Part shown: piece after piece, positions 1 through 55,603 of the stretch
How positions within the stretch are numbered: position 1 is the first letter of the stretch
Layout of the letters: each line of letters starts with the position of its first letter
Source: Bugula neritina
Taxonomy: Eukaryota; Animalia; Bryozoa
NCBI GenBank assembly: GCA_964035545.1
Contig: OZ037765.1
Coordinates: forward strand, 2,728,001 to 2,792,000
DNA length: 64,000 bases
Direction of reading: 5' to 3'
Program-made: the position numbers and the translations under genes
The notes under the pieces: model-generated
The model's database searches: none
The model's input: only the letters and a program-made list of their open reading frames with translations
Told to the model about the DNA's origin: nothing

Positions 1-2650
1 TGTTCTGTTCAGCACATTTTTCTTGAATTTGGCAAAAGCTAAATATCATATCAATGGTGCTCCTGCTGTTTCGAAAGCCACACTGTGTTTCTGAAAATAT
101 TCCTGGAGTTATATTTACATTGATTCTGTTGAGGATGATACGGGCCATAATCTTTCTAGCTATAGACAAAAGCGAGATTCCTCTATAATTTCTAAAGTCC
201 TTCCTATTACCCTTTTTAAAAATGGGCGCAATGTTTGCATCTTTCCAGTTTTGTGGCATATTCTCGTTACTCCATATATAAGCAATCGAATCATATAGTT
301 TGTCTTTAAGCCTGATTCCACTGTACTTCCACACCTCAGCTGGAATGCCACATTCTCCAAGAGCTTTATTCTCCTTGGTTGCATCTATAGCATCCAGAAG
401 CTTATCAAAACTTGGCATATCATCTAGACTTAAATTGGGTGGCATATTTATGAGAATATTGAGAGCTTCCTGATCCACTTCCCACGGTACATTCAGCAAC
501 AGGTCAAAATGTTGGGCGAACCTTTTTAAGGTATCATTCTTTGCTGTAAGTACTGTTTCACCACTTTGGTCCAGCAATTGGGCGGTTCCCCTGTTCTGTG
601 GCCCATAAAATTTTCTAAGGCCATCGTCGAATGCTTTCATGTTGTTTTTATCAGCTGCCTGTTGGAGTGATTCTGCTTTTTCTTCCCACCATTGAGACTT
701 TTTTCCTCGAGTGTATTTTTGCAACTTGCTGCGTGCTTGCGCTAATCGGTCAGTGCTACTTCTTGTTCTCCTGTGTAGTGCTTTTGAGTTAGCCTTATTT
801 CGTTCATTTGGTAATGCATTCAGCTTTGCATCATTGTCATCAAACCAACCCTGATGCTTTCTTTCTGCTCTACCTAAGACTTTGGAAGCTGTGTTGAAGG
901 CTGAGATCTTTAACCTTTCCCATCTCTCTTCTAAGGTTACACCTTCATCATCTCTATAGTCCATTGCCTTATCCATCTGTTTCTGAAACTCCTGTAGCAT
1001 ATCCTCATTTTGTAGTTTCCCCACATTTAGTTTGCATGCTGAATTGCCTCTTGTCTTGTTCTTTGCTTTCCTTAATGCAAAAGCTAGCTTGGACCTGATC
1101 ATGATATGGTCAGTTGAGCAATCAGCACCTCTCATTGCCCTAGTATCTAGCACATTATTCTGGTCTTTCCGTCTTGTAATCACATAATCCAGGAGGTGCC
1201 AATGCTGAGAACATAGGTGCATTCAAGTGACTTTATAATGCTGCCTGTGTGTGCCAGGATAGGCTTATTGAGTTGGCTAGCAACAAGCATCGAGCAATAC
1301 TTTCTTAATCTTTGAATTTTATTTACTCTTTGTCTTGTACAAAAATACATACATAAGTAAACTTCAAATAACATCAACAAAAACATAAAACTTCAAACTT
1401 ATAATTCTACTTACAAACATCAGCTCTTTATAGCGCCTTCCTGACAAGTGAACTGCTAATACTTCTAATACATTAAAAATAACATAACCAAAAAGCTAAC
1501 AAAATAGCTGAACAAGCTGCAAAAAGCTAACATATATTGTTTATTCAAATTTTGGCAAAGAGCCAGGATTTTCTCCCTGGCACACTGTGCTTGAATACTG
1601 TGTTCGTGATAACAAACTGGTATTCAGAACAGAATGTCAGTAGCAGCTCTCCATTTGTGTTACATTTTCCAACTCCTTGATTACCAATAACGCCTGGCCA
1701 ATTTTTTTGAGCTTCACACTCTACTCTTGCATTACAGTCATTGGCTATAATCAGTTTGTCTGAGATGGATATATTTTTTACTGTTTCTCTCAGTTTATTG
1801 CAAAAATCCTCTTTCTTTTCTTCCGAATTTGTCATTGTTGGAGTGTAAGCACTTACTATTGTCACATAATGATTCTTTTTCAGTGGCAGTCTCATGGTTA
1901 TAATTCTATCACTTATTGCTGTTGGTTCTTGTTCTAGATAAGGCATAATTGTATTCCTAATAGCAAACCCCACCCCTAATTCTCTTCTTTCTTTCTCACC
2001 CTTACCACTCCAAAATAATGTGTACCCATTATCAGCAAGGCTATCATTGAGGGCAATCACACAAAGTTTCACACAAAGCTGCAATATCTATATGTTGTCG
2101 CCCCAGCTCTTTTGCAACCAGTGCTGTCTGCCTCTCTTGTCTTTTTGAATTATTCCGGTCTAGTAATATTCTAACATTCCATTCTGCTAGTCTCAGAACT
2201 TTTCTGAACTTCCCATTTCGTCCTAGCTGACTTTTCACTGGCTGACTGAGCGAGAGCAGACCAGCGTGAACCTTATTAACCCGAGCTAGTATCGAATACT
2301 GTTTCAATTGTCATAATCCATAAAAATGCATGCGAAATGGTCAAGTGAACTTGGCTTTTGTGTTACCATGTTCTCTCTCTCTCGGCAGGGTGTTAATGAG
2401 ATTTAGTGGCAAGAACAGGTCAAGACATGCTAGCATTTACAACCTGCTGCAGTGGCTGGCCGTTATACGTGTTTGTTTGTACACGCCCTTAGAAACTGCC
2501 ACAGATACCCACTGAAATGGTCTTTCAGTAGATGTTATTTTTTAGTTTTACATGGATGTCCAGTACACCCTCCCTAATGTCAAGACATTGGGGGTATCGG
2601 TTTAGTTGCCGACAGCCCGACCCATGAAACAGGTAGTACCGGTTACATGG
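1..2650 (-). mobile_element. Degenerate non-LTR retrotransposon (LINE, RTE-like): APE endonuclease plus start of reverse transcriptase; runs off the left edge
   Basis: Minus-strand translation gives APE motifs (LAEWNVRILLD, IDIAALCET, GVGFAI, TIVSAYTPT, NGELLLTFCSEYQFVITNTVF, WHLLDYVI, STDHIMI). These are followed by GIPAEVWK, LFKKG and the RT-start ETQCGFRNSRSTIDMIF...IQEKCAEQN. Contains stops and frameshifts. The 5' boundary near 2650 is approximate. Confidence 0.9.
1250..1584 (-). mobile_element. Solo-LTR-like 335-bp insertion nested in the LINE endonuclease
   Basis: TG...CA ends with a 9-bp terminal inverted repeat (TGTGCCAGG 1250-1258 / CCTGGCACA 1576-1584) and a 5-bp target duplication CTGTG (1245-1249, 1585-1589). 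Removing it restores the LINE frame (TVFKHRQHYKVT*MH). TATA-like and AATAAA motifs lie on the minus strand. Confidence 0.8.
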
Positions 2651-2848: not shown

Positions 2849-2900
2849 ATCTTTCGAGTTCAAAGGCATAGAATTTGAAGCTACAATCGCTACACAATAC

Positions 2901-5900
2901 CTTCATACTCCATGGTCCAGCCAGCTGGACAGATCCTTTTAGCTGAATACATCATTACGGCCCCTCTACGTTTGGTATAACACCTGGTACACGGAACATT
3001 TTGATAAAGTGTTCCTTGTGGAAAAATATGTCCGTGACTGTGATCTCGGTATTCTGTGCCAGACAGCCAAGATCCGTACCATGGTGGAGAGGTTCCTGTA
3101 TAATACTTATTGTACTGTGGATTGAGGGGTAGGCACTGAAAGTTTGTTCCGCCACCTGCATGTGTGAAGTGGGCATTGGCAGCAAATCCTAAAAACAAAT
3201 TAAACAATAAAATTTTTGAAGCTATAATAGCTTTGCTTGTTTTTAAAATGTACTGTTTGAACAAAAAACTGTGCAATGGACAAAGGAGTGTGCATGTTGT
3301 GATAGCTAGCCACTGCTATTTCAAACCGGATGTTTCGTATATAGTCGAAGGCTACAAAATAATGGTTTCAAGGTTATCAAGTTACAAAAGCAAAAAAATT
3401 AAACATTAGGATTTTTGTAAACTTGATTTACAACATTCTTTAAAAACACATTTTATCAAACGATAGGCAAATCAAACTTATCATGAGATGTAGGAAACAT
3501 TATATATACTGGGGTTATTAATTTTAAGCTCACTAAACTAAAATTGATTTATAGAATGCAATGCATTGATGTTGAGGGGACATCTTTTATAAAGCTATAT
3601 AATCAATAAAATATTATTTTTTAAGTTGCATGGTGCTCAGCCATGTCAAATTACAGGTCTTAAAAGTAAGCTAGTTTCAAATTTTTGATGGAGAACTGGT
3701 AAAACAATAATCTGCTAAATCAGTTACATGGCTATAGTAATTGGGTACCTTAGCAAAAAAATGCCAGTTTTACTATAAAGTTTTTGTAGTAAGAAAGTCA
3801 ACTAGGGCATAATTATTGAGTGCAAAAAAGTAATAAAAAATATTTTATTTCATCAATAAAAATGTATTATTGTAGTGGCCAGTGAAGCGTAAGGCCACGG
3901 GCTCACGAACCAATCCTCATTAGGCACATGATTCGACCCCCCCCCCCGCAAAGCAGAAAGGCTTCCGGACAGTATTCTCGTAATATAGTTCAGTTAGAGC
4001 GTGATTGTGATAGAATAGGTGTTTTATATATTTGTGTTAATAAACTTATACTACTTTTACTTAGTGTATTAAATAAACCTTCTCTCTTAATTACCCGTCT
4101 GGTGTCTAACAATGCAACGTGGATAATTACAGTGTACACAAATCCCCATACTCAATAAAATTGTGGAAATTATAACATTAATAATTAATAAACCAAATGC
4201 AGAAAAAATTGCACCATTCAGTAAAAATAGGACTCTCGTTGATACTCTCATAAAAACCAGTATTACTTTCTTTTTATTCTTTTACTGAGAAAATAACGCT
4301 TTACTAACTATTAAACATAAATATGAAAAATTAATTATTATCCACTCATAACTAAAATCAGTTTTTCAAAGATGCAGAATTACATCAGATAATCGCACAC
4401 AGATTGCACACCCAAGATTTTTTTCAACTTCGGAAACCTCCTACTGAGCTTAGCAGTTAGGCCAGTGTCATGGACAGCAAACTTGTTTATTGAAATTATC
4501 TAAAGTGGTGGCATATAATGTAGCATTTAAATTGTTCTTCTTTCAAATTCTTTTTGCATGTGCACAAAGACTGAAGATGTTGCTTTCAACACATTTGCTA
4601 ATTTCTTTAGGCTAACAATAGTATCTGAAAAGTTGTAAAGTTTTATATCTACTTTAGACGTCATCTTAAGAGTTGGGACTTTGCTTTACATATTTTTTCC
4701 AATTCAGGTTTCACAGTATTAAAGTCCATCTCAAGTGTCAATTGCTTATTACTCTAGTTGATATACTCAAAGTGTATTCATTGTTTAATGCTCGACAAGC
4801 AAACTTTATTCAAAAATATTTAAACAACTTGTAAAGGCTTTTCCCTATAATAAATTAATTGTGTTTATTTTAGTTGAAGGTATACTTTGTGCTCTATGCA
4901 TAAAAGTATCATAAATTGTATTGCTGCAGGTAACTTGAAAGATCGGAAACTAAGCTGGATTGAGGCAGGCATACAGTATTTGAGTTAGACTCATGAGATC
5001 TAGAGCAATGGTTAAAATAGGTTTACAAAAAGTACAGAGAAATGTGAAAAGAGATAAAATTTCTGAGTGCATTATTTTTATCTTACCAGTATACAGAACC
5101 TCTGAGTCACTTCCACATGATTTTCTCCCCCATCTGGTGTACACGGCACCGCTTTCAACATTGGCAGCACTGCCCTGTTCACCACGAGACCCTTTGTTTC
5201 CTTGTACACCTCTGATTCCAGGAACTCCTGGGTTTCCTTTGTCTCCCTGTTCTCCTTTGACACCTTCAACTCCTGCTTCTCCTTTATCTCCCTTTTGTCC
5301 TGGTAAACCTTGAGGTCCTGCAGCACCGCTTAATCCATCTCTCCCTAGTTAAGTGAAAAATATTATCGTTTGACCAGGCAAACTTTATTATGAGGTCACA
5401 TAAATGTATGCCCAAAATATAACATTATGTGACATGCTGAACATTATTGTATTCTTATACATATTTTATTCTAAAAAGTCATACAGTTATATTTAAATGA
5501 AAACCTAGCCATTGAGTTAAAGTTGTATTGTGAAGTGTGACATTCTATACAAAAAAAATTTGTGATTGATTCTCTACGAATAAACTTTTTAAGATCTATA
5601 AACAACATCGTATTATTCATGAAACTGCAGAGGTATCTCAACACTATACATTCCACCCAGTTCTCCTGCACTCCACTGCAACAATATTTTATAGTAAACA
5701 AACTATTTAAATATGGTTGGACGTTGCATCATTAATTTGATAAAGTTTATTTTTTCTCACCATCTTTGCCATCAACTCCATCTTTGCCATTAACTCCATC
5801 TTTGCCATCAGCTCCATCTTTGCCATCAGCTCCATTTTGACCATTTAAACCATCTCTTCCATCTCTACCATCTCTTCCATTTTTACCAGAGAGGCCTCTT

Positions 5901-11865: not shown

Positions 11866-12923
11866 ATACGTAGAACCGCACATACACATTACTACATGAT
11901 TTCCAAACCATAATATTTGTCGAGCAAAGATAACTCTTATCTTTGATTATCAATTGCAAGTTATATAGAAATTTTGAAACTAAAGGCCAATAAATAACTT
12001 CGCTTTATTTTAACTGACCAATCTGACTAAATCAGAAGTTCAATTTAATTGATTCAAAACTAATTTAGTTATTTATTATAAATTACAAATAAATATATAT
12101 TTTTATAATTATTTAAAATTTTTGTTCCACATAAAGTACTGTTCAAAAAGTCATTATCCCTTTGCACTAATAATTTATTTTAAAAAATCTTTTGCATTTT
12201 TGTCAGAAAGTCAATCTGTTATGTAATTTGGCTAGGTAGGAAAGTAACCACTGATGGCAATAAGACAGAATATCAGTAACTCATGTAATTATTGCATAAT
12301 AGTTAGATAGTCAATAAACTCTTCCACTTATAATAGAGCACTAGTTTATTCATGATTTTAACTGAGTTAAAAACTGTACTTTTTATGATGCTATAGCAAC
12401 ATAATTTGAGTCAAAGTGTCACAGGAGCAACTATCACCAGATGTCGTTCCATAACATCTTTAAGACTGGGTCTAACAGCTAGAAATCCGAACCCATGGCC
12501 CATAGTCCAATTCAGTGTTTTTTCAACATAAACTTGTTGTATTTATTCGGTGTCTATAATTTATTCATTCACTTTTATTTGCTCTGCAAATCAGTTCTCC
12601 AACATAGCACGAGTAAAAAGATTGAAAGTATAACTTCTCAATACATCAATTCACACAGAGTGCATTCACGAGACACGGTTTTGTATCCTACAAATATCAG
12701 CACATTCTAAGCATTTTACTGAAGCTAGGAAAGGGCAAAAGTGCTGTTAGTAATTATTTTATGTTGCTTTTTACTATTTTATTTTTGTTGTTACTTGAAA
12801 CTTAAACATTTTTCAATAAAATATTTTTGACATAAAATGCATGAACTATTATTTACGAAAAAATCAGCGACATAGTTGGAAAGTTTGTTAGTATTTATAG
12901 GCATTGCAGTCAGAAAACTTCAG

Positions 12924-17633
<4,710 letters not shown>

Positions 17634-19279
17634 TTTTTGGTGTAAGAAACAGTTTTTCCGTATTTTACCAGAATATTTGAGTTGTTGAATTTGGTTTCTG
17701 TCAGTCACGTTCTAGAACTAATGTTATTGTATTCTTTAACTTCTCTAAGCCACTGCGATAAAGTGATATATTTCAAGTGATGCTAACAACTAAGGAAGCT
17801 TTTCAAATATCTATAATCATGTTGAATGATCTTTATTGCTAAATTGTACATTTATAGCTTGTTTTATTTTTCTCCATTAACAAATAAATCAATTAGATGG
17901 TCAAAATTAGATAATATATTGAACACATCAGTCATATACAAACCTTTTATTTAGCTAATATATTGCTGAATGAGTAAGTATAAAAAAGAGAAATGTAACA
18001 TGATATATCTAAATTCCTTTCTGAGTGCAACTATACAGAACAAATACTTGCATGCTTGAAAAATTACCTCGAAACCTCTTATTGCATTTTAAAAAGTTTT
18101 ACTATGTATATTTTGTGCACATTCATTAGCTAACGTGAACAATGGAGTTAATTTTAAGTAAACTATTTGCCTTCCCACTATTGCTGTTGGCTTCGTTGTG
18201 TATTGTGGATGCAAAAAACATTTACAAAAAAAGCACAGCCACACCTGTAATTCATCTCAGATACTACATTCCTTATTAAGTCACTGCAGTTTACTTGTTT
18301 TTGCATATCTATAACATGTCTGTAAAGGCTTTTACATCATTGTTCTCTACTTTGAAAACTTTTACACATATTTTTATAGAAGCTTTGTTTTCCACTATAA
18401 GGAATTTAATTCCAAACCTCTGGCTTGCAAGCTCGCTAACCATTACCATACAGGAGCTACTGGGTGATTTCAACACTGCACACCACAGGTGCAACTTTCC
18501 AGTTTCACAGTTCCAGAGACAGCTAGATTCTGACTCGTAAAAACCCAACTTCTACTAATGAATCTGACCTTGAAAAGAATTTCAGAGTGACTCATAAGCG
18601 CTGTTTGTCATTCTCAGAGTTGTATGAATATGTAGTGTGTTGGTCTCCCCAATAACAACATATTTCTATATGTGGTGACAGCTCTGTTGGGTAGTTTGTG
18701 GATTGAATTTGACTAAATCATTTCATTTTAGCAGAACTCAATGTATTTTATATTTTTAGAAAGTTGATACAACAAGTAGTCACAGAAAAACAGCAGTTTT
18801 GAATATATTTACTAAAAGTATTATATTACTTTTACAAGCAACACACTAATAGGTACAACAACTCCAAAATGTGTTAACTATTAATGCAAAAGTATTGGCA
18901 TTGTTGACTGCGCACATACACGTGACGCTGTCTCAAATCACTCAGAGGTTTAGATAAAGCAGCTTTGTTTAGCAATAACTTTAGCTAGTTGGATGAGGTC
19001 AGTTTGGAGCACAGATTCAGGACTTGCATGTTCATGAATTTCGTACACAGTACCCCCAACATCTCCCCTTCCACCCCCCCCCCTTACTTTGATCACAAGT
19101 AATACAATGAGGTCTATATACTAAATAGTGATATATTGAATTGATCTATATACATTAAATATATGTCAACGAATTTAAAAGCTGATAGCACTGTTTGCTC
19201 TACTCCAAGTAATATAAAAATGGAAGCATCAATATTGTAGCAAGCTCAACCTTTGAAAAACCAGAATACATAACTATTA

Positions 19280-19990
19280 TTCTATTTCTAATTTAGAACA
19301 CAGGCTTTTCCTAAATTCTACTCTATTACTGCACCTATACCTCTACTTTATTTGGTCAGAAATCCTTAATTTCAGGAGAATGCAACTTCTTATTTGCGTT
19401 TCTGATATTGTACTGCAAAGCTGGCAGCTAATATTTCACTTCATCTAGTTTTTTCCCATTTCGTGTTTAAAAAAACTGCATATTCTAGTTCTATTATAGT
19501 AAATACCACCTATATAATAGTATGCTCATAGTAATTTCATTAGTGTATATTGTAAAAAGTTATTAAGTGCAAATAAAATTGCGTGCTACTGTTGATACAT
19601 ATTACTATAATACACCTGCTACTAAAAACTGCACTGTGGGTGCTATATTGTCTAGCTACATTAGCCTAGTCAAACCTTTTGCGGTTAAAAACTATTTACC
19701 TTAACAATACTCAACTATGGCTATTATCAAATCTATTGATAGAGTGAGCAAAGCTGAATAATGATACTGATTTTTGACACCAAGCTGTAGCTTTATTGGC
19801 CTAGGAGCTGGTCACGCTTCAGTGAATGTCAATAGCCAAATTGATTGCACAATACTCACATTTTTGCTAAACTGAGCTACGCTTTAAAGTGCCTAGTAAA
19901 ACTTTACTATACAGTCGCCCCAAGAAAACAAGTAGTTCCTCAAAATGGCGGCTTTCTATTCTGCTGACTAGCTGGTCAGGTAAATCCATT
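19280..19990. repeat. Interspersed or duplicated segment; similar to about 33625-34320, with a short piece at about 28770-28820
   Basis: Shared strings such as gagaatgcaacttcttat, gcaaagctggcagctaatattt, tatttaccttaacaatactcaa and aatttagaacacaggctttt. Confidence 0.75.
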
Positions 19991-22911: not shown

Positions 22912-25900
22912 ATGGCTTGTAAGGATTTATAATACTACTTACTATTACAGCAATTTTAAATCATCAATTGTTGCTGAAATTTTGCACTGTATGCAATTTT
23001 CAAATATTATATATTACCCTAATATGACATAAATAATTTACATGTATACAATATTTGTTGGCAACTTCATATTAGAAATTTATCACTTGCATAGTATAAT
23101 ATTCACCTGCATAGTACAATATCTATTTACTTAGCTTTTAAAAGTAAAACTTAGCTATTATTGAAGAAATATCTAGCTGTTTAAAATAATAATTAGAAAC
23201 CATGTAAAATGGGATGTGTAAGTCCTTCATAAAACCTGGTATACCTAATGTAGTAATGAGTTTACCCAGTGGTCCCTGTGGTGTAATGGTTAGCATACTT
23301 GCTTGCAAGTGTGCTAACCATTGGGTTCAATTCCCAGTGAGGGCAAAATCATTTTTCACTTAACGGTGCATAAAAGATAATCTAACAGTATATCTGTGAT
23401 ATTTTTAAGTCTTAGATATTAAATTTAGCTTACTAACAATTTATTAAGTTTTTAATACTTTAAATAGTACTTGCAAAATGTTGCTTTTCCAAAATAGGCA
23501 GTATAAAGGAAAGCTTATATATGTTTCGCCAAAGTATTGCTATTTTTAGAATAAAAATACTTGGAATATAAAAAGGTATTGTAAAAAGGTTAACGCTACT
23601 TTTCATTATTGTTTTCCTTAATAACATATTTCTTCATAATGAATTTTATTTTTGACAGTTTATAAAGTGTGGTTCAAGCACTCTGGTATGTCAGAAGCTG
23701 ATGTGAGGGAGTCCAATTCTAAGGTGGTAAGACTCACTAAATCAGAGATTAAACAGAAGGTAGGATCAGAGAAGATAATTGAACTTAAGATCCATGGTAA
23801 TCTACCTTCAGACATACAAGAGTGGGCTCTGGATGTGACCCACCTCCAAATCAAACGAGTAGTGACAAAAGCAAGTCTGAAAAAGTTAGTGAATTTTAAA
23901 TTTTAAAATATTTTTTGTAGAAGTGCCATGATTTCAGCAGGTAACCAAAAACTACCAACTGGTTACATTTTGAAGACTCCGATACTTATATTGTGATAGA
24001 TCAATTAGCTATTAGCTAATAATTATGTTGTACCTGTATTGGCTATGTTGCATGGTGGCAGTTTTTTTACCCAGCTTAGGTTCCTAATAATATTTTCTCT
24101 CAAGTTCAGGTTTGATATGTAAACGGACTAATTTCTTGAGTTGAAAATGCCTATTCTACAGTTCAAGCCTTTTTTAGAAACAAGCCTTTTACGTAAGAAA
24201 TTGTTTGATTTCCAGTCTCTCAAAACTGACTAAGGTAACAAAACTGAAAATCTCTGATAACAACTTTGGAACTCTTCCCGATGAAGTATCATCTTTGACC
24301 TCTCTAACAGAACTCACTCTACAGGCAAATGGTATCACAGATCTGCCGAACAGGTTGGTGTTAACTAGTATACACGCTTGCTTGACTTAATCAATTTATG
24401 TAATTTTAAAATATGCAGCTGCTGGACAAAGAAGTAGGTGTATTAAAATTTCTAAAGATATTTAAAAACATGAGATTTCAAATTTTCCCTATTACTGCAC
24501 TTAAATAAAAACGGAGTGCACTTTTGAAAGAATATTCACAATATTAATATTCAGTACATTATGGCAGCAATACAGGATTGAATGAGTATATGAAGCAAGC
24601 AAATTTCATAAATACTTGGGCAAATGAAAGGTTAACTTTCACAGCTCTATATTTTTTAGCTAACTATAATGTTACACGATTTTTCTGCACCTCTTGATAA
24701 TTTATTGTTTACTGCTAACTATTGATGAATCGATTTTCAAGCACACCTTCTTTGTTTTGTTTTATTATTGTATTTTTATAATATTTTATTTTACATGTCT
24801 AAATGCATGCTTTGATTCACTGCATCGATAGTCTAGGGAGGCTAAAAGAGCTTACAAAGTTGGACATTTCACACCAGCAGTTTCCCAAAGTACCTTCTGT
24901 TATTGAAGATCTTACAACGCTCACTGAACTCATAATGATTGATTGTGGGTTGTCTACTCTACCTGAAAAGTAAGCATGATACCAGCAATAGTGCAATCAC
25001 AAATAGCACATCATATAGTAGCCCTGAGGTTAACTGTAAATTTTCTCTTAATTCCTTGAACAATACTAGCTGACCTAGAATTTGTTAGACGCAGCACCCA
25101 GTCTAAGGTCGCTGAGTGCAGTAGTTGAGTGGCTGGGGAGAAGGGGCTGGTGCTTTGATTTTAGACGTATAATATACAAACCCTACACTTGTTGACCCCA
25201 AACTTTAAGCTACTTGTTAAATTACCCATCCTAGTAGTGATTTACTTCCCTATATAATATGTCTATCTGTTTTATTTTCTACTTTAGTCTGATAGGAATT
25301 AAATTTCTCAACATTAAGCTGTTCTAATATTTTTAGTTTGCAGTGTTTTTCAAGACTACAGAAGTTGGATGTATCTGACAATCCTTTGTGTGTTGTACCG
25401 CAAGTTATTCCTTCTCTTCGCAGTGTCACTGCCCTAGACATGAGTGGGTGTCAGATCAAAGTTTTCTCTCCCAGGTAGCCATTTACTCATTATAGTGTCT
25501 TTTTTGTAAATCATTGACATTTTAAAGTAATTTTTGACTTCCTTTTGTAGCTTTTGTTAAACCGGTTTCTTTTTTGTTCTTATGGCAAAAAAACAGATTT
25601 TACTTTTGTGTTGGTGCAAGCATTGTAACTTGATAACATGAAGGAGATTACTTGCAATCAACACGTTGTTTTTTTTAAAAACAGCATATGTGTTTTTAAA
25701 AATTGACTTGAAGAAATGCTTTAGTTTACATTTCATGTGTTGTACTTGCAGCTTGACAACCCTGCCTGAACTGGTGACATTAGATCTTTCAGGCAACTGC
25801 TTTACAGAATTACCTGTCACGTTCAACCGTATGAACAAGTTGGTTTCAATAGATCTGAGAGGAAATCAGAGTCTCACCTCGTTAACTGCCTCAATTAGAT

Positions 25901-28900
25901 CTATGGAAACATTGAATGAAGTCAGGGTGGGTGGCTGTGAGTCCCTAACCTCACCTCCATACCAAGATTGTGAGAAAGGTACTCAAGCTATTAAAAACTA
26001 TTATGAAAGCCTGCGCCAAGGAGAAATTATTGAACTGTCTATGGCTACCATTATCGTAGTTGGAGAAACTCTTGCCGGTAAAACTCGAGTTATAAAATGT
26101 CTGCAAGAACCGGGTACTGCATTTGATTTAGATCAAGCCACGAGAGCCTTCGAAGTTACTGAACTACAGTTTCACAAACCACTGTCCATATTGGAATTTG
26201 GAGGAGGTCAAAAGTATCAATTTACTCACAGACTTATGCAAAAGGAAAATTGTCTGCCGGTTGTAGTTGTCAGCATGAAAGAGTTTGAAGACAGACACAC
26301 AGTTCAAGGTATCTCAGCAAAAAAGGTAGTGCAAGCTCTAATTTTCAACTGGATCAACCAATTCTATTTTTCCTATTCTGGTTTAAATTCTCCCAAACTT
26401 GTCCTGACTAACAAGGATGGATTCTCTGATGATCCTCAGAAATTTACTGAACTAAAACGTATTCTTTTACAAGCCTGCAATTCTGTAATCGCAGACATAA
26501 AAAAAATTGAAGAAGGCAAATATGAGCCAAATGAAATTTCTGAAAAAAGAGATTTGTTTGATTTTTTTGGAGAAAGAGATGTCTTTGAAATCGGTGCACA
26601 TCATACCGATATTGAAATCCTTACTCGTTTGAGAGATGATTTGTACCAAGACAGCAACAGGTACAAGAGGTCAGTAGCAAAGACGTATGACAAAATAAAA
26701 AAAGTACTTTTATCTGCTGATGAAACCGTTGTCGACTTGAATGCAGAATATGGCATTTGGTCTGTAAATTTGCAAGTAAACAGAAGTCTCATTGAAGCTA
26801 CAATGGAGCATATGCATGATTCTAGCCAACTGTTGTTGTTTAAGGACAGTGAAAGGCTAAATCAATTTCTTTTTCCAAACATTGGTAAAATTGCTGAAAT
26901 GATTGGAGTGTTGTTCCCAAAAGACACAGCTGCAAGAGTAGATCATTTCACCAGAATTTTCTCCCTTAATTCGATAGAGAATAAGCAGGTGTATGAAGAT
27001 TGTTATGCTTTTTTTTCTACTTCTGGTCTTATAGAGGAAAAGCTTCTTTTTCTTTTATTGAAATTCGAAACAGCATTTTGCAATGAGCAAAGTATGGATG
27101 TTGCTGTAGCTTTATTGGAATCTTTCCAGTTGCTTTTCAAGCATCGGTGGTCTGAAGAAAAGATTTTTTATGTCTTGCCATTTTCTTCTGAAGACCATTT
27201 CAGCAACCATCTTCATAGTCCAGAAGAAAAACTCAAGTTCCGCACAGAGTTGAGATTCACCAGTTTCCTGGTGGACTTCTCCGTCTACCAGCAGATGGTT
27301 GCCACAATGCTCAACTATTCTCTGGGAGAAACAAGAACTGTAGTTAAACAAAATGGCATTCAAATTACCACCAACTTTTCTACTGTTCAACTTGCATTTG
27401 ATTTTGAAGCTAGAAAAGCTGTGCTACAATTAGCGACTAAACCGAAAGATGTAGGTGTCGGTTGGCAGCAGATTAGAGAATTGACAAACGATCTGATCAC
27501 CCAAGTTGTCAATTGCTTGAGAACTGAAAGCGTCACTTGCAAATCATTCTGTCCACATTGTTTGGCCGAAAAGAGAGTGCCTCCTTTTACCACAACAAAC
27601 CCCGACTGGTGCACTTTGTCCACAGCGCCTCAACAAGAAAGACAACTCTGCAATACTGGAATGAATGTCCCAGGAGCTTTGCTGTCACCCTGTAAGTTGA
27701 TAGTTTAAAGAATGAGAATAATGTTTAAACACACCATTTACGCTTGAGCTGTTATAGTACAACTAGCAGGAGTTCCACAGAAATAGAAACTTTCAACAAG
27801 CATGAGTAAGAGTAAATGATGCAATGGTGTTCACAAAAACCTGGCACTTGAGAGATTGAGTTGATTAATTGCATTAAATGCATTTGCCTAATAAAAATAA
27901 TAATGAATGAACTGTAAAATAAGTTACTATATATGTTATTTATTTAAGCATTCATCGTAATAAAATTTATTATAGAACAAACTGATCACATTTCTACAAA
28001 AATCAGTATATATCAACTGTTTTATTTTATTTCTCAACTTGACTGCACATGCATTAAAATTACCAAATTTCATTTTTTATTGTCATTTTCCAGGTGAGGA
28101 ATTGTCAGATGAGGACGTGAGAATCTTGGAAGAATTTGTTAACAACATTCAGCAACATCAACCGCTTACTGGTATATTTAATAATTTGCCTAATTTAATA
28201 ATGTTTTATACATTTATAACATAACTTTTGGTCGTGTCATAGTTGGTAAATTCAAATCTACAAAATAATGACTCAAATTTATTTACGGAATTTATTCATA
28301 GCATTGTGATTTCAAAGCAAATTTACTTTTGAAGCAAAGTTAATACAAATTTTCTGCTTGTTTATATCTAATAGATGAAGAATATGAACACGCAATCAGC
28401 ACCTTTGATCTTGGTGATGACGAGGAGTTATCTACCGCTGACTCATCAAGTATTGAATCATATTCACTCAGTGAAGCAGATGCAGATGAAAATGAAGATG
28501 ACGGTACCGAAAGTGTGATATCTGCCCCGGAAGAATGGCCTCCTCAAGATGGAATAATTCCATTTGAACTTGTTCCAACCACAAAAAGAAGCATACAAGA
28601 TTGTTTTCACAATGATGATGTAAGTAACGTTATGTGAACAGCAACATTTACATTTACGAGCAGTAGTGGAGAAGTTTGGATAGCCTAAGTTCTTTAATTT
28701 CATTATTAAACTTTAGTTCTGGGGTTTTGGTGGAAATTCTTGCAGGAACATAACTTTTTATGCTACGTTTCTAATTTAGAACACAGGCTTTTCTCAATAT
28801 CTCTATTACTACACCTATAAGCTCAAAATTTAGGCTCTCGATTAAATCCTAAAGCTGTGGTTTAATTTATGAAGTAACTTTGTATTATGGAGAGTGCTGA

Positions 28901-31191
28901 CTAAGATTGTGATCAAGAAATTTAGACCGCTCACCAACCAGTGAAATACAAACAATTTTTTATAAAAATGCTTATAAAAGCCAACTGATGCATACCTTTA
29001 CAGTTCTATGTTTTGTTTTAAGTATTACGGAATGACTACGCCAAGAGGAAGAGCCTTGGTGATTAACAACTACAGATATAGAGATCCTTACGATATCCGG
29101 GAAGGTGCAGAGTACGATGTCAACAACACACGAGCACTGCTAGAAGGACTAGACCTCAATGTTACAGTAGAGCATGATCTCAGAAGAGACGTGAGTAATA
29201 GCTGACTATAGCACTTGCTTAGTTAGACTCAGTTTACAAACTGAGAACTTGAATCTCATAAAACTTGTCATCTCAATGAAAAACTGAGTTACTTGAACTG
29301 AGATTAAAAAATTCAATGGCTTTGTACTAATTTCGAAATTAAATCTCATTTCTTCTCGCAGTTTTTGTTTTATTGTCCCGTGCAATGCGGGCATGTAAAT
29401 TTATTTGCTCTATGTTAAACATCCGATCGAAATGAAGATGTATGATTGAAATGTGATTTTTGGTAAAAGCAAACTTAAAAAGATCATTGTCTAATTCTCA
29501 CTTATTAAAGGCTGTACAGCTTTTTGTTAATATAACTATCACCTTCTTTTTTCAATAACAATGCTGTGCATTTTCATACTTGAGCATTAAAATCGTAAAC
29601 ATAAGCTAAATTACATTTACGTTATGAATTTATAAGTGTTGCAGCATTTTTCTTAAACGTTTAGTTCTGCTGTATCACTCTGATGGATTATGTTCTCAGG
29701 AAATTCTACGGGCTCTGAGAGAAGAGACGAGAGTTATGAGTCATAGGCAGCATGGCATCTTTTTCTTCTTTTTCTTTGGACATGGTGGCGAGAACAACAC
29801 AATTTACGGACAAAACTGGGAGCCTGTAAATCTTGTAGAAATTTACCATCTTCTGAGTCCAATTGCATTCCAGATGTTTGCTGGAAAACCTAAAGTTGTC
29901 ATCATTCAGGCCTGCAGAAAGGGTATGTCTAACTATAATACAATTGTTAAATGTACGGAAAATTATATTACATGTCATTTATACATGTTTTATTACTCCA
30001 TTTATGGTAGTTAACAGGTTATCAGGTTATTTATGTAGCACCTTCAATATTTATACATAGAGAAACTTCTTTTTGTCTTTGCTAGTATATAATGGTAGCT
30101 GTAGATATTTATTAATGTTTCCTTTTTGACATTTCATTTAATTAAAATATTTTTAAAAGCAAATTATTTTTTATATTTTGTACATTCTATTTGGGCACAA
30201 ACATTTCAAAATCTACGATGCATAAAAATAAACAAATTATGTGATAATTCAAAGCTTTCAAGTTATTTTAACATAAAATTTATATTTACATGTAAAACTA
30301 CTTAAATGTGTGAATTTTGGATTCTTTTAGATCGGCTGCCCAATAGCCCTGTCAGACCAACACCAGCTCTCCCTCTCAATATTGATGATTTCCTGATATT
30401 CCGAAGCTGTTTTGAAAGTAACCATATATCTAACTCTGCTTTCATTTTACATTATATTATATGTGCATAATGTAAAGTTAGTTTTGCACATTTTCAATAA
30501 TACTTTCAATATTATTTTAGACCAAAGATCTTTACGACGTCACCGAGCGGGCTCCCTCTTTATCCGTACTATAGTAAAGACTGTAATGAAGCACTGTTGC
30601 CACAGAGACTTGGCCGAATTGTTTAAAATTGTAAGCCTAAAAACTGTTAACTATATTATGTGACCCTGTTATTGGTAGATTGTATTATTTATGAACTCAA
30701 CTATAGTGACAGTATATGATAGCCTGTAAGTTAGCTTGTGTAGCCTTGAGTTTTTCTTAGCAGCCCCTGTGGTGTAATGGTCAGTGTGCCTGCTTTTGCA
30801 AAACCGAAGGTCTCGGGTTCGAACCCCAGTAGGAGCAAAAATTTAACAGCTCTGAATTTGATGCATTAATAACCTTGGAAAAATGAGATTAGCTTAACTT
30901 CTTGTTTTAATCTGTAATGGAGTGAATTTTCACATCTACACTTTAGAAATGAATCAGGGAAATAAGTTTTATACTTGGTGTTATTATTTTCAATAAACCT
31001 TTGAAATAACTGTTTTTATTCTAATTATAATGTATTCAATGACACTTCAGGTCAAGGACAGAGTGCGGACTATAACTAGATTGCTACAAGAAAGGTACCC
31101 AAGAGATTGCGACCCACAAATGCCGATGGTTGAAAATGGTTTGACATCTCGTCGTAGAATCTTGCTTTTCCCTGAATATCATGGAGAGTAA
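22912..31191 (+). CDS. LRR-Roc-COR (ROCO, MFHAS1-like) protein fused to a C-terminal caspase (peptidase C14A) domain, about 1212 aa
   Basis: Coding exons 22912-22918, 23659-23884, 24216-24353, 24832-24969, 25337-25474, 25752-27691, 28094-28171, 28375-28619, 29023-29190, 29700-29922, 30331-30417, 30521-30630 and 31051-31191. All are GT-AG, phases are compatible, total 3639 nt with no internal stop. Motifs: 23-aa LRRs; ROCO hinge LTSPP...GTQAIKNYY; P-loop GETLAGKT; EFGGGQKYQFTH; LTNKD; COR ending in CPHC; caspase PRGRALVINN, R-EGAEYD, FGHG, GKPKVVIIQACRK, DFL, SLR....GSLFI, QMP, LLFP. Confidence 0.9.
23271..23345 (+). mobile_element. tRNA-derived SINE head
   Basis: A box TGGTGTAATGGTTAGCA and B box GGTTCAATTCC; stems are degenerate. 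Confidence 0.65.
25752..27691 (+). CDS. Large exon: last LRRs + Roc GTPase + COR domain of the ROCO-caspase gene
   Basis: Core of ORF 25666-27708; bounded by the ttgcag acceptor and gtaagt donor. Confidence 0.92.
29023..31191 (+). CDS. Caspase domain exons (p20 + p10) of the ROCO-caspase gene
   Basis: Five exons; catalytic His in FGHGG and Cys in QACRK (TGC at 29913-29915). Confidence 0.92.
30764..30836 (+). mobile_element. tRNA-derived SINE head (pseudo-tRNA) in last intron of the ROCO-caspase gene
   Basis: A box TGGTGTAATGG and B box GGTTCGAACCC; anticodon stem is imperfect. Confidence 0.7.

Positions 31192-46533: not shown

Positions 46534-55603
<9,070 letters not shown>

What the first reader, a model, noticed from the sequence alone, without database searches (positions are those of the whole stretch)
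22912..31191. LRR-Roc-COR-caspase fusion: a candidate single-chain sensor/switch/protease
Seen: 13 in-phase exons encode LRRs, a Roc GTPase, COR, an acidic linker and a complete caspase domain with His-Gly and QAC-Cys; I see no CARD, DED or death domain. Established: characterised animal ROCO proteins carry kinase or death domains (LRRK1/2, DAPK1) or no effector (MFHAS1); COR mediates nucleotide-regulated dimerisation; initiator caspases are activated by induced dimerisation on death-fold platforms (apoptosome, inflammasome, DISC). Inference: LRR ligand sensing and Roc-COR dimerisation could activate the caspase directly, replacing an NLR/adaptor/caspase complex with one polypeptide. I do not know of a characterised protein with this architecture, but I could not run a search.
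Basis: partly seen in the sequence, partly recalled or inferred. Interest (0 to 1): 0.95.

Follow-up and report, generated by a model that had tools for sequence, protein, structure and literature searches.

The report
Bryozoan LRR-Roco GTPase fused to caspase
This is a real, spliced gene of a moss animal (bryozoan) that joins a leucine-rich-repeat surface, a Roc-COR GTPase switch and a caspase in one 1,212-residue protein; it belongs to a large, untested bryozoan family whose design was known before only from bacteria and from one passing mention in an annelid worm.

Summary
Observation confirmed. Thirteen in-phase GT-AG exons give 1,212 aa: N-cap, about 10 LRRs, Roc, COR, one helix, acidic linker, complete caspase, no death-fold. 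Pfam misses this Roc-COR, but its fold matches LRRK1/LRRK2/Roco over its whole length (Foldseek E 4e-17). RNA contigs splice COR to the linker exons, so the stop at 27708 is intronic. The linker-to-caspase joint (28619/29023) was not shown directly; one run retains that intron. At least seven Watersipora subatra RefSeq models have the same architecture, one with the same intron layout. Best reading: a single-chain initiator caspase switched on by Roc-COR dimerisation (inferred, about 50%). This copy is a divergent member: Walker-B Asp to Glu, QACRK for QACxG, shortest intersubunit linker, so it may be weakened or a decoy. The design is not without precedent: bacterial LRR-Roc-COR-caspase (predicted), the Runella Roc-COR-CHAT gasdermin protease (shown active), an Owenia ROC-caspase (noted in passing). 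I also found a separate glass-sponge Roc-COR-CARD-caspase family. No paper on the bryozoan family was found. The scan found this family before on other DNA of this genome (at least 8 loci).

The parts
22912..22918 (+). Exon 1: ATG plus 4 nt (predicted start; not covered by my RNA check)
   Evidence: GTAAGG donor, phase fits exon 2; least certain exon
23659..23884 (+). Exon 2: family N-cap (W-x-x-H-S-G-x-x-E motif) and first degenerate LRR
   Evidence: Aligns to N-termini of Watersipora P0106, P0103; same motif visible in P0045, P0108
24216..24353 (+). Exon 3: two LRRs (138 nt, phase 2-2)
   Evidence: Pfam LRR_4/LRR_8
24832..24969 (+). Exon 4: two LRRs (138 nt, phase 2-2)
   Evidence: Pfam LRR; RNA loose end before 25337 reads exon 4's end
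25337..25474 (+). Exon 5: two LRRs (138 nt, phase 2-2)
   Evidence: Pfam LRR_1; joint to exon 6 in 4 runs
25752..27691 (+). Exon 6: last three LRRs, Roc and COR in one 1,940-nt exon
   Evidence: dN/dS 0.30 against the 85% identical copy L001
26062..26085 (+). Roc G1 P-loop GxxxxGKT, intact (aa 320-327)
26140..26142 (+). Roc switch I Thr346, invariant in 48 of 48 aligned members
26194..26205 (+). Roc G3: EFGG, with Glu364 where 45 of 48 members have Asp; shared with the close copy P0001
26407..26418 (+). Roc G4: TNKD (family THxD; P0001 has His)
26665..27691 (+). COR (COR-A and COR-B, approximate start), ending in an invariant CxHC and a further conserved Cys (possible zinc site)
28094..28171 (+). 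Exon 7: one helix after COR (78 nt; same size in Watersipora XP_067948342.1)
   Evidence: joint 27691/28094 in 3 runs, 28171/28375 in 2 runs
28375..28619 (+). Exon 8: acidic linker (aa 889-945; candidate caspase sites STAD-S, EDD-G) and the strand-helix segment that precedes the caspase core (aa 950-970)
28620..29022 (+). Intron 8: holds a high-copy transcribed repeat (about 28651-28817); retained in run X3; read-through stops at 28635-28637
29023..29190 (+). Exon 9: caspase large subunit start; S1 Arg996 at 29098-29100
   Evidence: Pfam Peptidase_C14
29700..29922 (+). Exon 10: catalytic His1054 (29781-29783), Gln1096, Cys1098 (29913-29915); motif QACRK
30331..30417 (+). Exon 11: very short intersubunit linker and first small-subunit strand
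   Evidence: joints on both sides in RNA; 21 aa against 39-186 in relatives
30521..30630 (+). Exon 12: small subunit; S1 Arg1135 at 30535-30537
31051..31191 (+). Exon 13: caspase C-terminus and stop
   Evidence: joint 30630/31051 in 2 runs

Best explanation
One gene, one protein: a member of an expanded bryozoan family in which an initiator-type caspase carries LRR-Roc-COR in place of a CARD. Shown: the exons, the domains, the catalytic dyad and Asp-binding pocket, expression of spliced RNA, the same layout in a second bryozoan, purifying selection on Roc-COR. Established elsewhere: COR is a dimerisation domain; Chlorobium Roco is mainly monomeric with GTP and dimeric without nucleotide, and LRR, Roc and COR are coupled through switch II (PMC6337361); initiator caspases are activated by dimerisation (own knowledge). 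Inferred: at rest the protein is a GTP-bound monomer and the caspase, hanging on a flexible acidic tether, is inactive. A ligand or a membrane contact at the LRRs promotes GTP hydrolysis or release, COR dimerises, the two tethered caspases pair and become active without needing a cut between the subunits (this copy has no well-placed Asp there). Cuts in the acidic linker could then release the protease. The likely output is cell death or cleavage of a defence effector, in immunity or self/non-self rejection.
For: Gene model. Whole Roc-COR fold. Collinear full-length Watersipora proteins, 25-28% identical over 1,100-1,230 columns, with the same intron positions from COR to the stop. Tether disordered, no death-fold, in the homolog's model. 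His, Cys, Gln and first Arg invariant in all 10 Watersipora caspases compared, so the family is kept active. 102 clusters below 50% identity to each other, LRR number varying from a few to over 20, as in immune receptor families; brown-algal LRR-ROCO genes show such diversification (PMC11378527). Bacterial precedent with shown protease-driven death (bioRxiv 10.1101/2021.06.07.447441).
Against: No functional data for any animal member. Monomer-dimer switching is shown for bacterial Roco, not for this family. This copy has Glu for the Walker-B Asp, Lys for the Gly two residues after the catalytic Cys (Gly in all 27 other caspases compared), and lacks the Asp six residues after the Cys that 9 of 10 relatives keep and that caspase-3 needs (D169; PMC6571611). 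The LRR tail in exon 6 is conserved, not diversifying, against L001 (dN/dS 0.09); exons 3-5 could not be tested. The intron-8 splice was not displayed and run X3 retains that intron.
Confidence: 0.5

Rival explanations
1. The family works as above, but this copy is a weakened or decoy member: it senses or pairs through LRR-Roc-COR and tunes an active paralog (as cFLIP does for caspase-8), helped by a caspase-less isoform from intron-8 retention.
For: Long branch in both trees. Walker-B Asp to Glu fixed in both close copies. QACRK, no D169 equivalent, 21-aa linker. Spliced RNA that keeps intron 8 in X3, with a stop after five codons.
Against: His, Cys and all three S1 residues are intact, which a long-dead protease would tend to lose. 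X1 and X2 contigs break exactly at 28619 and 29023, as expected if a spliced form exists beside the retained one. Retention may be unfinished pre-mRNA.
Confidence: 0.22
2. Roc-COR does not switch the caspase by dimerisation. LRR-Roc-COR only places or holds back the protease (membrane or Rab-type recruitment as in LRRK2, or autoinhibition), and an upstream protease frees the caspase by cutting the acidic linker; the role could be developmental (metamorphosis, polypide recycling) rather than immune.
For: Long disordered acidic tether with Asp-Gly/Ser sites; a conserved SD-x-SD motif in Watersipora linkers; LRRK2 activation depends on membrane recruitment (PMC6337361).
Against: A developmental switch does not need dozens of paralogs with variable LRR arrays. 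The caspase keeps the pre-core segment of the standalone caspase P0150 and groups with it, which fits an initiator type.
Confidence: 0.2
3. Two neighbouring genes: an MFHAS1-like LRR-Roc-COR gene ending in or after exon 8 and a separate short caspase started in intron 8 (Met at 29032).
For: The 28619/29023 joint was not displayed; X3 has one contig running into intron 8 and another starting in it; a repeat in intron 8 could supply a 3' end or a promoter.
Against: Exon 8 already encodes the start of the caspase homology and is spliced to COR in X2 and X3. Canonical phase-0 sites. The same intron is spliced in Watersipora RefSeq models at the same place, and at least seven such models are single proteins.
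Confidence: 0.05

Closest known systems
Bacterial LRR-AP-GTPase(Roc)-COR-effector conflict proteins (Kaur et al. 2021, PMC8195603)
   Same: Same order: variable LRRs, Roc, COR, C-terminal effector, with caspase named among 24 or more effectors; multi-copy; proposed counter-invader role.
   Different: Prokaryotic and predicted only. Here the protease is an animal-type caspase with an Asp pocket, the gene is spliced, and the effector is fixed across the family.
Runella zeae Roc-COR-CHAT gasdermin protease (Johnson et al., bioRxiv 10.1101/2021.06.07.447441)
   Same: Roc-COR fused to a caspase-like His/Cys protease in one chain; shown to cleave an effector and kill the cell.
   Different: CHAT family, cuts after Leu; substrate gene is next door; control by Roc-COR was not tested (no mention of GTP in the text). 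No substrate is known here.
Owenia fusiformis caspase with ROC pro-domain (Horkan et al. 2024, PMC11463336)
   Same: Lophotrochozoan animal caspase (caspase-Y clade) with ROC instead of CARD.
   Different: One gene, noted in passing; LRR and COR not mentioned; not tested. No bryozoan was sampled. I could not get its sequence, so common descent is untested.
Glass-sponge Roc-COR-CARD-caspase family (Oopsacas minuta records named 'caspase-3'; found here)
   Same: Roc, COR and a complete caspase in one chain; multi-gene family.
   Different: No LRR, a weak CARD hit before the caspase, single long ORFs, a Roc with a large insert; not matched by the bryozoan Roc-COR profile; caspases form a separate clade. 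Probably an independent fusion.
MFHAS1 and brown-algal LRR-ROCO proteins (PMC6337361, PMC11378527)
   Same: LRR-Roc-COR; RefSeq names the Watersipora proteins 'MFHAS1 homolog'; LRRs on separate in-phase exons; expanded candidate immune receptors in algae.
   Different: No catalytic effector in MFHAS1 or the algal proteins.
NLR or Apaf-1 plus adaptor plus initiator caspase (inflammasome, apoptosome, PIDDosome)
   Same: Repeat sensor, nucleotide switch, proximity-activated caspase.
   Different: STAND ATPase rings and death-fold adaptors on separate chains; here a GTPase, a likely dimer, one chain, no death-fold.

Membership tests
ROCO proteins | Roc GTPase domain directly followed by COR | tested here: met
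   AlphaFold model matches LRRK1 (E 4e-17, TM 0.62), LRRK2 and Chlorobium RocCOR over Roc and COR; family profile hits Roco structures first; ESM features 0.96 to Roc/COR-A clusters. Pfam alone does not detect it in this copy.
ROCO proteins | G1 P-loop and switch I Thr | tested here: met
   GETLAGKT and Thr346
ROCO proteins | G3 DxxG and G4 motif | tested here: inconclusive
   G3 is EFGG (Asp in 45 of 48 members); G4 is TNKD (family THxD). Effect on GTP handling unknown.
ROCO proteins | GTP binding, hydrolysis, nucleotide-dependent dimerisation | not testable with these tools
   needs biochemistry
Caspases (C14A) | Caspase domain with large and small subunit regions | tested here: met
   Pfam Peptidase_C14 on exons 9, 10, 12; best solved structures CED-3, caspase-3/6; collinear with full C14 domains of relatives
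Caspases (C14A) | His-Cys dyad and Asp-binding S1 residues (Arg, Gln, Arg) | tested here: met
   R996, H1054, Q1096, C1098, R1135
Caspases (C14A) | QACxG pentapeptide | tested here: not met
   QACRK; Gly in all 27 other caspases aligned; the following intron is confirmed by RNA. Lowers confidence in full activity, not in ancestry.
Caspases (C14A) | Asp-specific proteolysis | not testable with these tools
   needs enzyme assay
CARD/DED initiator caspases (caspase-2, -8, -9, -Y) | Death-fold pro-domain | tested here: not met
   No Pfam hit; no room for six helices between COR and caspase
CARD/DED initiator caspases (caspase-2, -8, -9, -Y) | Placement of the protease domain in a named caspase clade | tested here: inconclusive
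   Groups with one unnamed standalone caspase (P0150) apart from sponge caspases; no named references were available
MFHAS1 orthologs | LRR-Roc-COR with no catalytic effector | tested here: not met
   complete caspase follows COR
NLR / STAND receptors | NACHT or NB-ARC ATPase | tested here: not met
   central domain is a Roc-COR fold
Bacterial LRR-Roc-COR-caspase/CHAT systems | Prokaryotic gene with CHAT or metacaspase-type protease | tested here: not met
   12 spliceosomal introns, animal-type caspase. Works like them; not a member.
Bryozoan LRR-Roc-COR-caspase family (unnamed) | Full architecture, shared N-cap motif, shared intron layout | tested here: met

The most novel reading that the evidence does not exclude
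Bryozoans use a large family of single-chain LRR-Roc-COR-caspase receptors as their main intracellular immune or self/non-self death trigger, with the Roco GTPase cycle directly gating caspase dimerisation in place of an NLR/adaptor platform; Roc-COR-caspase fusions arose more than once in animals (bryozoans, glass sponges, perhaps annelids), repeating a bacterial design; divergent members such as this one act as tuned or decoy partners.
Probability: 0.4. Interest if true: 0.88.

Novelty: new variant of a known kind. Interest (0 to 1): 0.7.

Why it matters
It would add a GTPase-switched, one-chain route to caspase activation in animals, beside apoptosome, inflammasome and DISC, and give colonial bryozoans a candidate receptor family for infection or colony rejection. 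It also makes an open question easy to test: what the Roc-COR monomer-dimer cycle does to an attached enzyme. A caspase needs dimerisation and gives a fluorescent read-out, so these proteins are natural reporters of the nucleotide state in which a ROCO protein dimerises, the point still debated for LRRK2.

Tried and rejected
Pfam on exon 6: no Roc/COR hit; phmmer of exon 6 against PDB sequences: nothing; both were sensitivity limits, solved by profile and fold. Stop at 27706-27708 as the gene's end: rejected, it is spliced out in three runs. A hidden exon in intron 10 that would lengthen the intersubunit linker: rejected, RNA joins 29922 to 30331. Tandem paralog in the window: none. Metagenome scans with exons 9 and 10 to find a transcript over intron 8: nothing, or only distant genomic caspases L007/L008. 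Search for the closest standalone caspase returned one unnamed protein, too little to name the donor clade. Per-position LRR entropy does not by itself show selection on the concave face; I draw no conclusion from it. Transfer from bacteria: not supported (animal caspase, introns) but not tested with a broad rooted tree. Supplement of PMC11463336 not held. Paper searches for a bryozoan or sponge ROCO-caspase found none; the library lacks most subscription papers. All outside searches were exon by exon or with Watersipora proteins as stand-ins.
Full report
Observation. Every intron is GT-AG, phases match, and the frame runs 1,212 codons without a stop. Exons 3-5 are each 138 nt, two LRRs, phase 2-2. 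Exon 6 (1,940 nt) holds the last LRRs, Roc and COR. Pfam, run exon by exon, finds LRRs and Peptidase_C14 but no Roc or COR, so I tested that part separately. The joined protein was used only inside local scripts; it was not sent to any search or fold tool.

Roc-COR is real but divergent. A search of 1.84 billion representatives with the post-LRR part of exon 6 gave 102 clusters: one at 85% identity, the rest at about 20-37%. Of 48 aligned members 42 hit Pfam Roc, 30 COR-A and 8 COR-B. The family profile ranks Methanosarcina and Chlorobium Roco first among solved structures, with LRRK2 close behind. An AlphaFold model of this exon (mean pLDDT 83.8, pTM 0.83) matches LRRK1 (E 4e-17, TM 0.62, 618 columns), LRRK2 and Chlorobium RocCOR. 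G1 and the switch I Thr are intact. G3 has Glu where 45 of 48 members have Asp; the 85% identical copy shares the Glu, so it is not a sequencing slip. G4 is TNKD against family THxD. Against that close copy (L001, 89.5% identical over 2.7 kb with introns) exon 6 shows dN/dS 0.30: purifying selection.

One transcript. Four probable RNA runs from three studies, 88-99% alike to the window, cover exons and leave most introns empty. Joints are seen at introns 5, 6, 7, 10, 11, 12 and, with some unlike letters, 9. So the stop at 27708 is intronic and COR is joined to the linker exons. The intron-8 joint (28619/29023) is not among the joints displayed (10 were hidden; only one call was allowed). Indirect support: contigs of X2 end exactly at 28619 and contigs of X1 and X2 begin exactly at 29023, the pattern of a branch between spliced and retained forms; the 3' end of exon 8 aligns with the segment just before the caspase core in continuous Watersipora proteins and in a standalone caspase; and the Watersipora gene XP_067948342.1 has introns at the same places from COR to the stop. 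In X3, contigs that are spliced elsewhere keep intron 8, which would give a caspase-less product ending five codons into the intron. Two expressed variants (14 and 41 differences in one 370-nt stretch) point to alleles or a close paralog.

A family. Watersipora subatra RefSeq models XP_067948342.1, XP_067947674.1, XP_067935178.1, XP_067932893.1, XP_067941065.1, XP_067934863.1 and XP_067941712.1 carry LRRs, Roc-COR and a complete caspase in one chain, under names such as 'MFHAS1 homolog'. They align with this protein end to end at 24-28% identity and several Watersipora members share its N-cap motif. LRR counts range from a few to 22. In a Roc-COR tree the Watersipora genes fall in several places among the unnamed members, and the window gene sits on a long branch. 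The organism is most likely Bugula neritina: inference from the Watersipora kinship, the 'symbiont metagenome' runs and an earlier scan note; not tested directly. Earlier follow-ups in this scan report the same family at eight or more other loci of this genome, with 50-69 genes; I did not verify the count.

The caspase. Arg996, His1054, Gly1055, Gln1096, Cys1098 and Arg1135 are in place, so the dyad and the Asp pocket are complete. Three things set this copy apart: QACRK instead of QACxG; no Asp six residues after the Cys (9 of 10 Watersipora relatives have it; the equivalent D169 is needed in caspase-3, PMC6571611); and a 21-aa stretch to the next conserved strand, against 39-186 aa in relatives, with no well-placed Asp for a cut between subunits. 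It would have to work as an uncut single chain, or it is weakened. There is no death-fold: a model of the Watersipora homolog XP_067932893.1 shows one helix after COR, then about 40 disordered residues, then the caspase.

How it most likely works. COR dimerises; Chlorobium Roco is mainly monomeric with GTP and dimeric without nucleotide, with LRR, Roc and COR coupled through switch II (PMC6337361). Initiator caspases are activated by dimerisation (own knowledge). The simplest reading is that a signal at the LRRs shifts Roc from the GTP monomer to the dimer, and the tethered caspases pair and switch on, then perhaps cut themselves free in the acidic linker. Family size and LRR variation suggest immunity or colony self/non-self rejection. 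All of this is inference (0.5). Rivals: this copy is a decoy or tuner (0.22); Roc-COR only places or restrains a caspase freed by another protease (0.2); two genes (0.05).

Comparison with what is known. The design has precedent. Kaur et al. 2021 describe bacterial LRR-AP-GTPase-COR proteins with variable C-terminal effectors including caspase (PMC8195603); the ESM Atlas returns a cyanobacterial COR-CHAT cluster as nearest look-alike of a Watersipora member, at a score that makes it a lead only. The Runella gasdermin protease is a Roc-COR-CHAT protein shown to cut its substrate and kill cells, though its Roc-COR control was not examined (bioRxiv 10.1101/2021.06.07.447441). Horkan et al. 2024 note one Owenia caspase with a ROC pro-domain and sampled no bryozoan (PMC11463336). 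I also found a family of Roc-COR-CARD-caspases without LRRs in glass sponges, including Oopsacas minuta; their Roc-COR is mostly not matched by the bryozoan profile and their caspases form a separate clade, so this looks like an independent fusion, on a thin outgroup. I found no paper on the bryozoan family or on LRR-Roc-COR-caspase in animals.

Verdict. Real gene, real architecture, member of an undescribed and untested animal family; a new variant of a kind known from bacteria and glimpsed in an annelid. Interest 0.7: surprising to caspase and ROCO specialists, and a direct handle on the Roc-COR dimer question, but with precedent, no functional data, and signs that this copy is an atypical member.

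Noticed in passing
window 28620-29022 (intron 8): High-copy, heavily transcribed repeat at about 28651-28817 (partial copy at 19268-19339). Run X3 keeps this intron in otherwise spliced RNA; read-through stops at 28635-28637, giving LRR-Roc-COR without caspase: a possible safety or decoy isoform.
   Followed up: partly
L002 6001-9642; proteins P0111-P0148: Glass-sponge family (Oopsacas minuta and unnamed ENA contigs) of single-ORF Roc-COR-CARD-caspases without LRRs, over 25 members, some in tandem, annotated only as 'caspase-3'. No paper found.
   Followed up: partly
window about 2890-5350 and 12880-15910, minus strand: Two tandem, near-identical genes with a short collagen repeat and a Cys-rich C-terminal domain (short-chain-collagen type), possibly secreted lectin-like proteins.
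   Followed up: no
window about 46700-55200, plus strand: Exons of an Ig / fibronectin-III type receptor (weak Ig hit at 52917-53576).
   Followed up: no
window 1-2310, minus strand: Broken endonuclease plus reverse-transcriptase LINE remnant.
   Followed up: no
window 23272-23345 and about 30765-30840: tRNA-like SINE heads in introns 1 and 12; ARAGORN calls the first a tRNA of undefined anticodon.
   Followed up: no
L003 10001-26428 (Watersipora XP_067949566.1): A family member whose caspase stops after the first caspase exon; no further caspase exons within 10 kb downstream. Truncated member or unfinished model.
   Followed up: partly
Watersipora linkers (P0027, P0043, P0103-P0107, P0109): A conserved SD-x-SD-x-E motif in the acidic linker, not clearly kept in the window gene; could be a cut site or a kinase site. 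Intersubunit linkers vary from 39 to 186 aa, some with Ser/Thr repeats.
   Followed up: no
L007, L008: Distant caspase exons (35-38% identity) on marine metagenome contigs, with similar intron positions; N-terminal domains not seen.
   Followed up: partly
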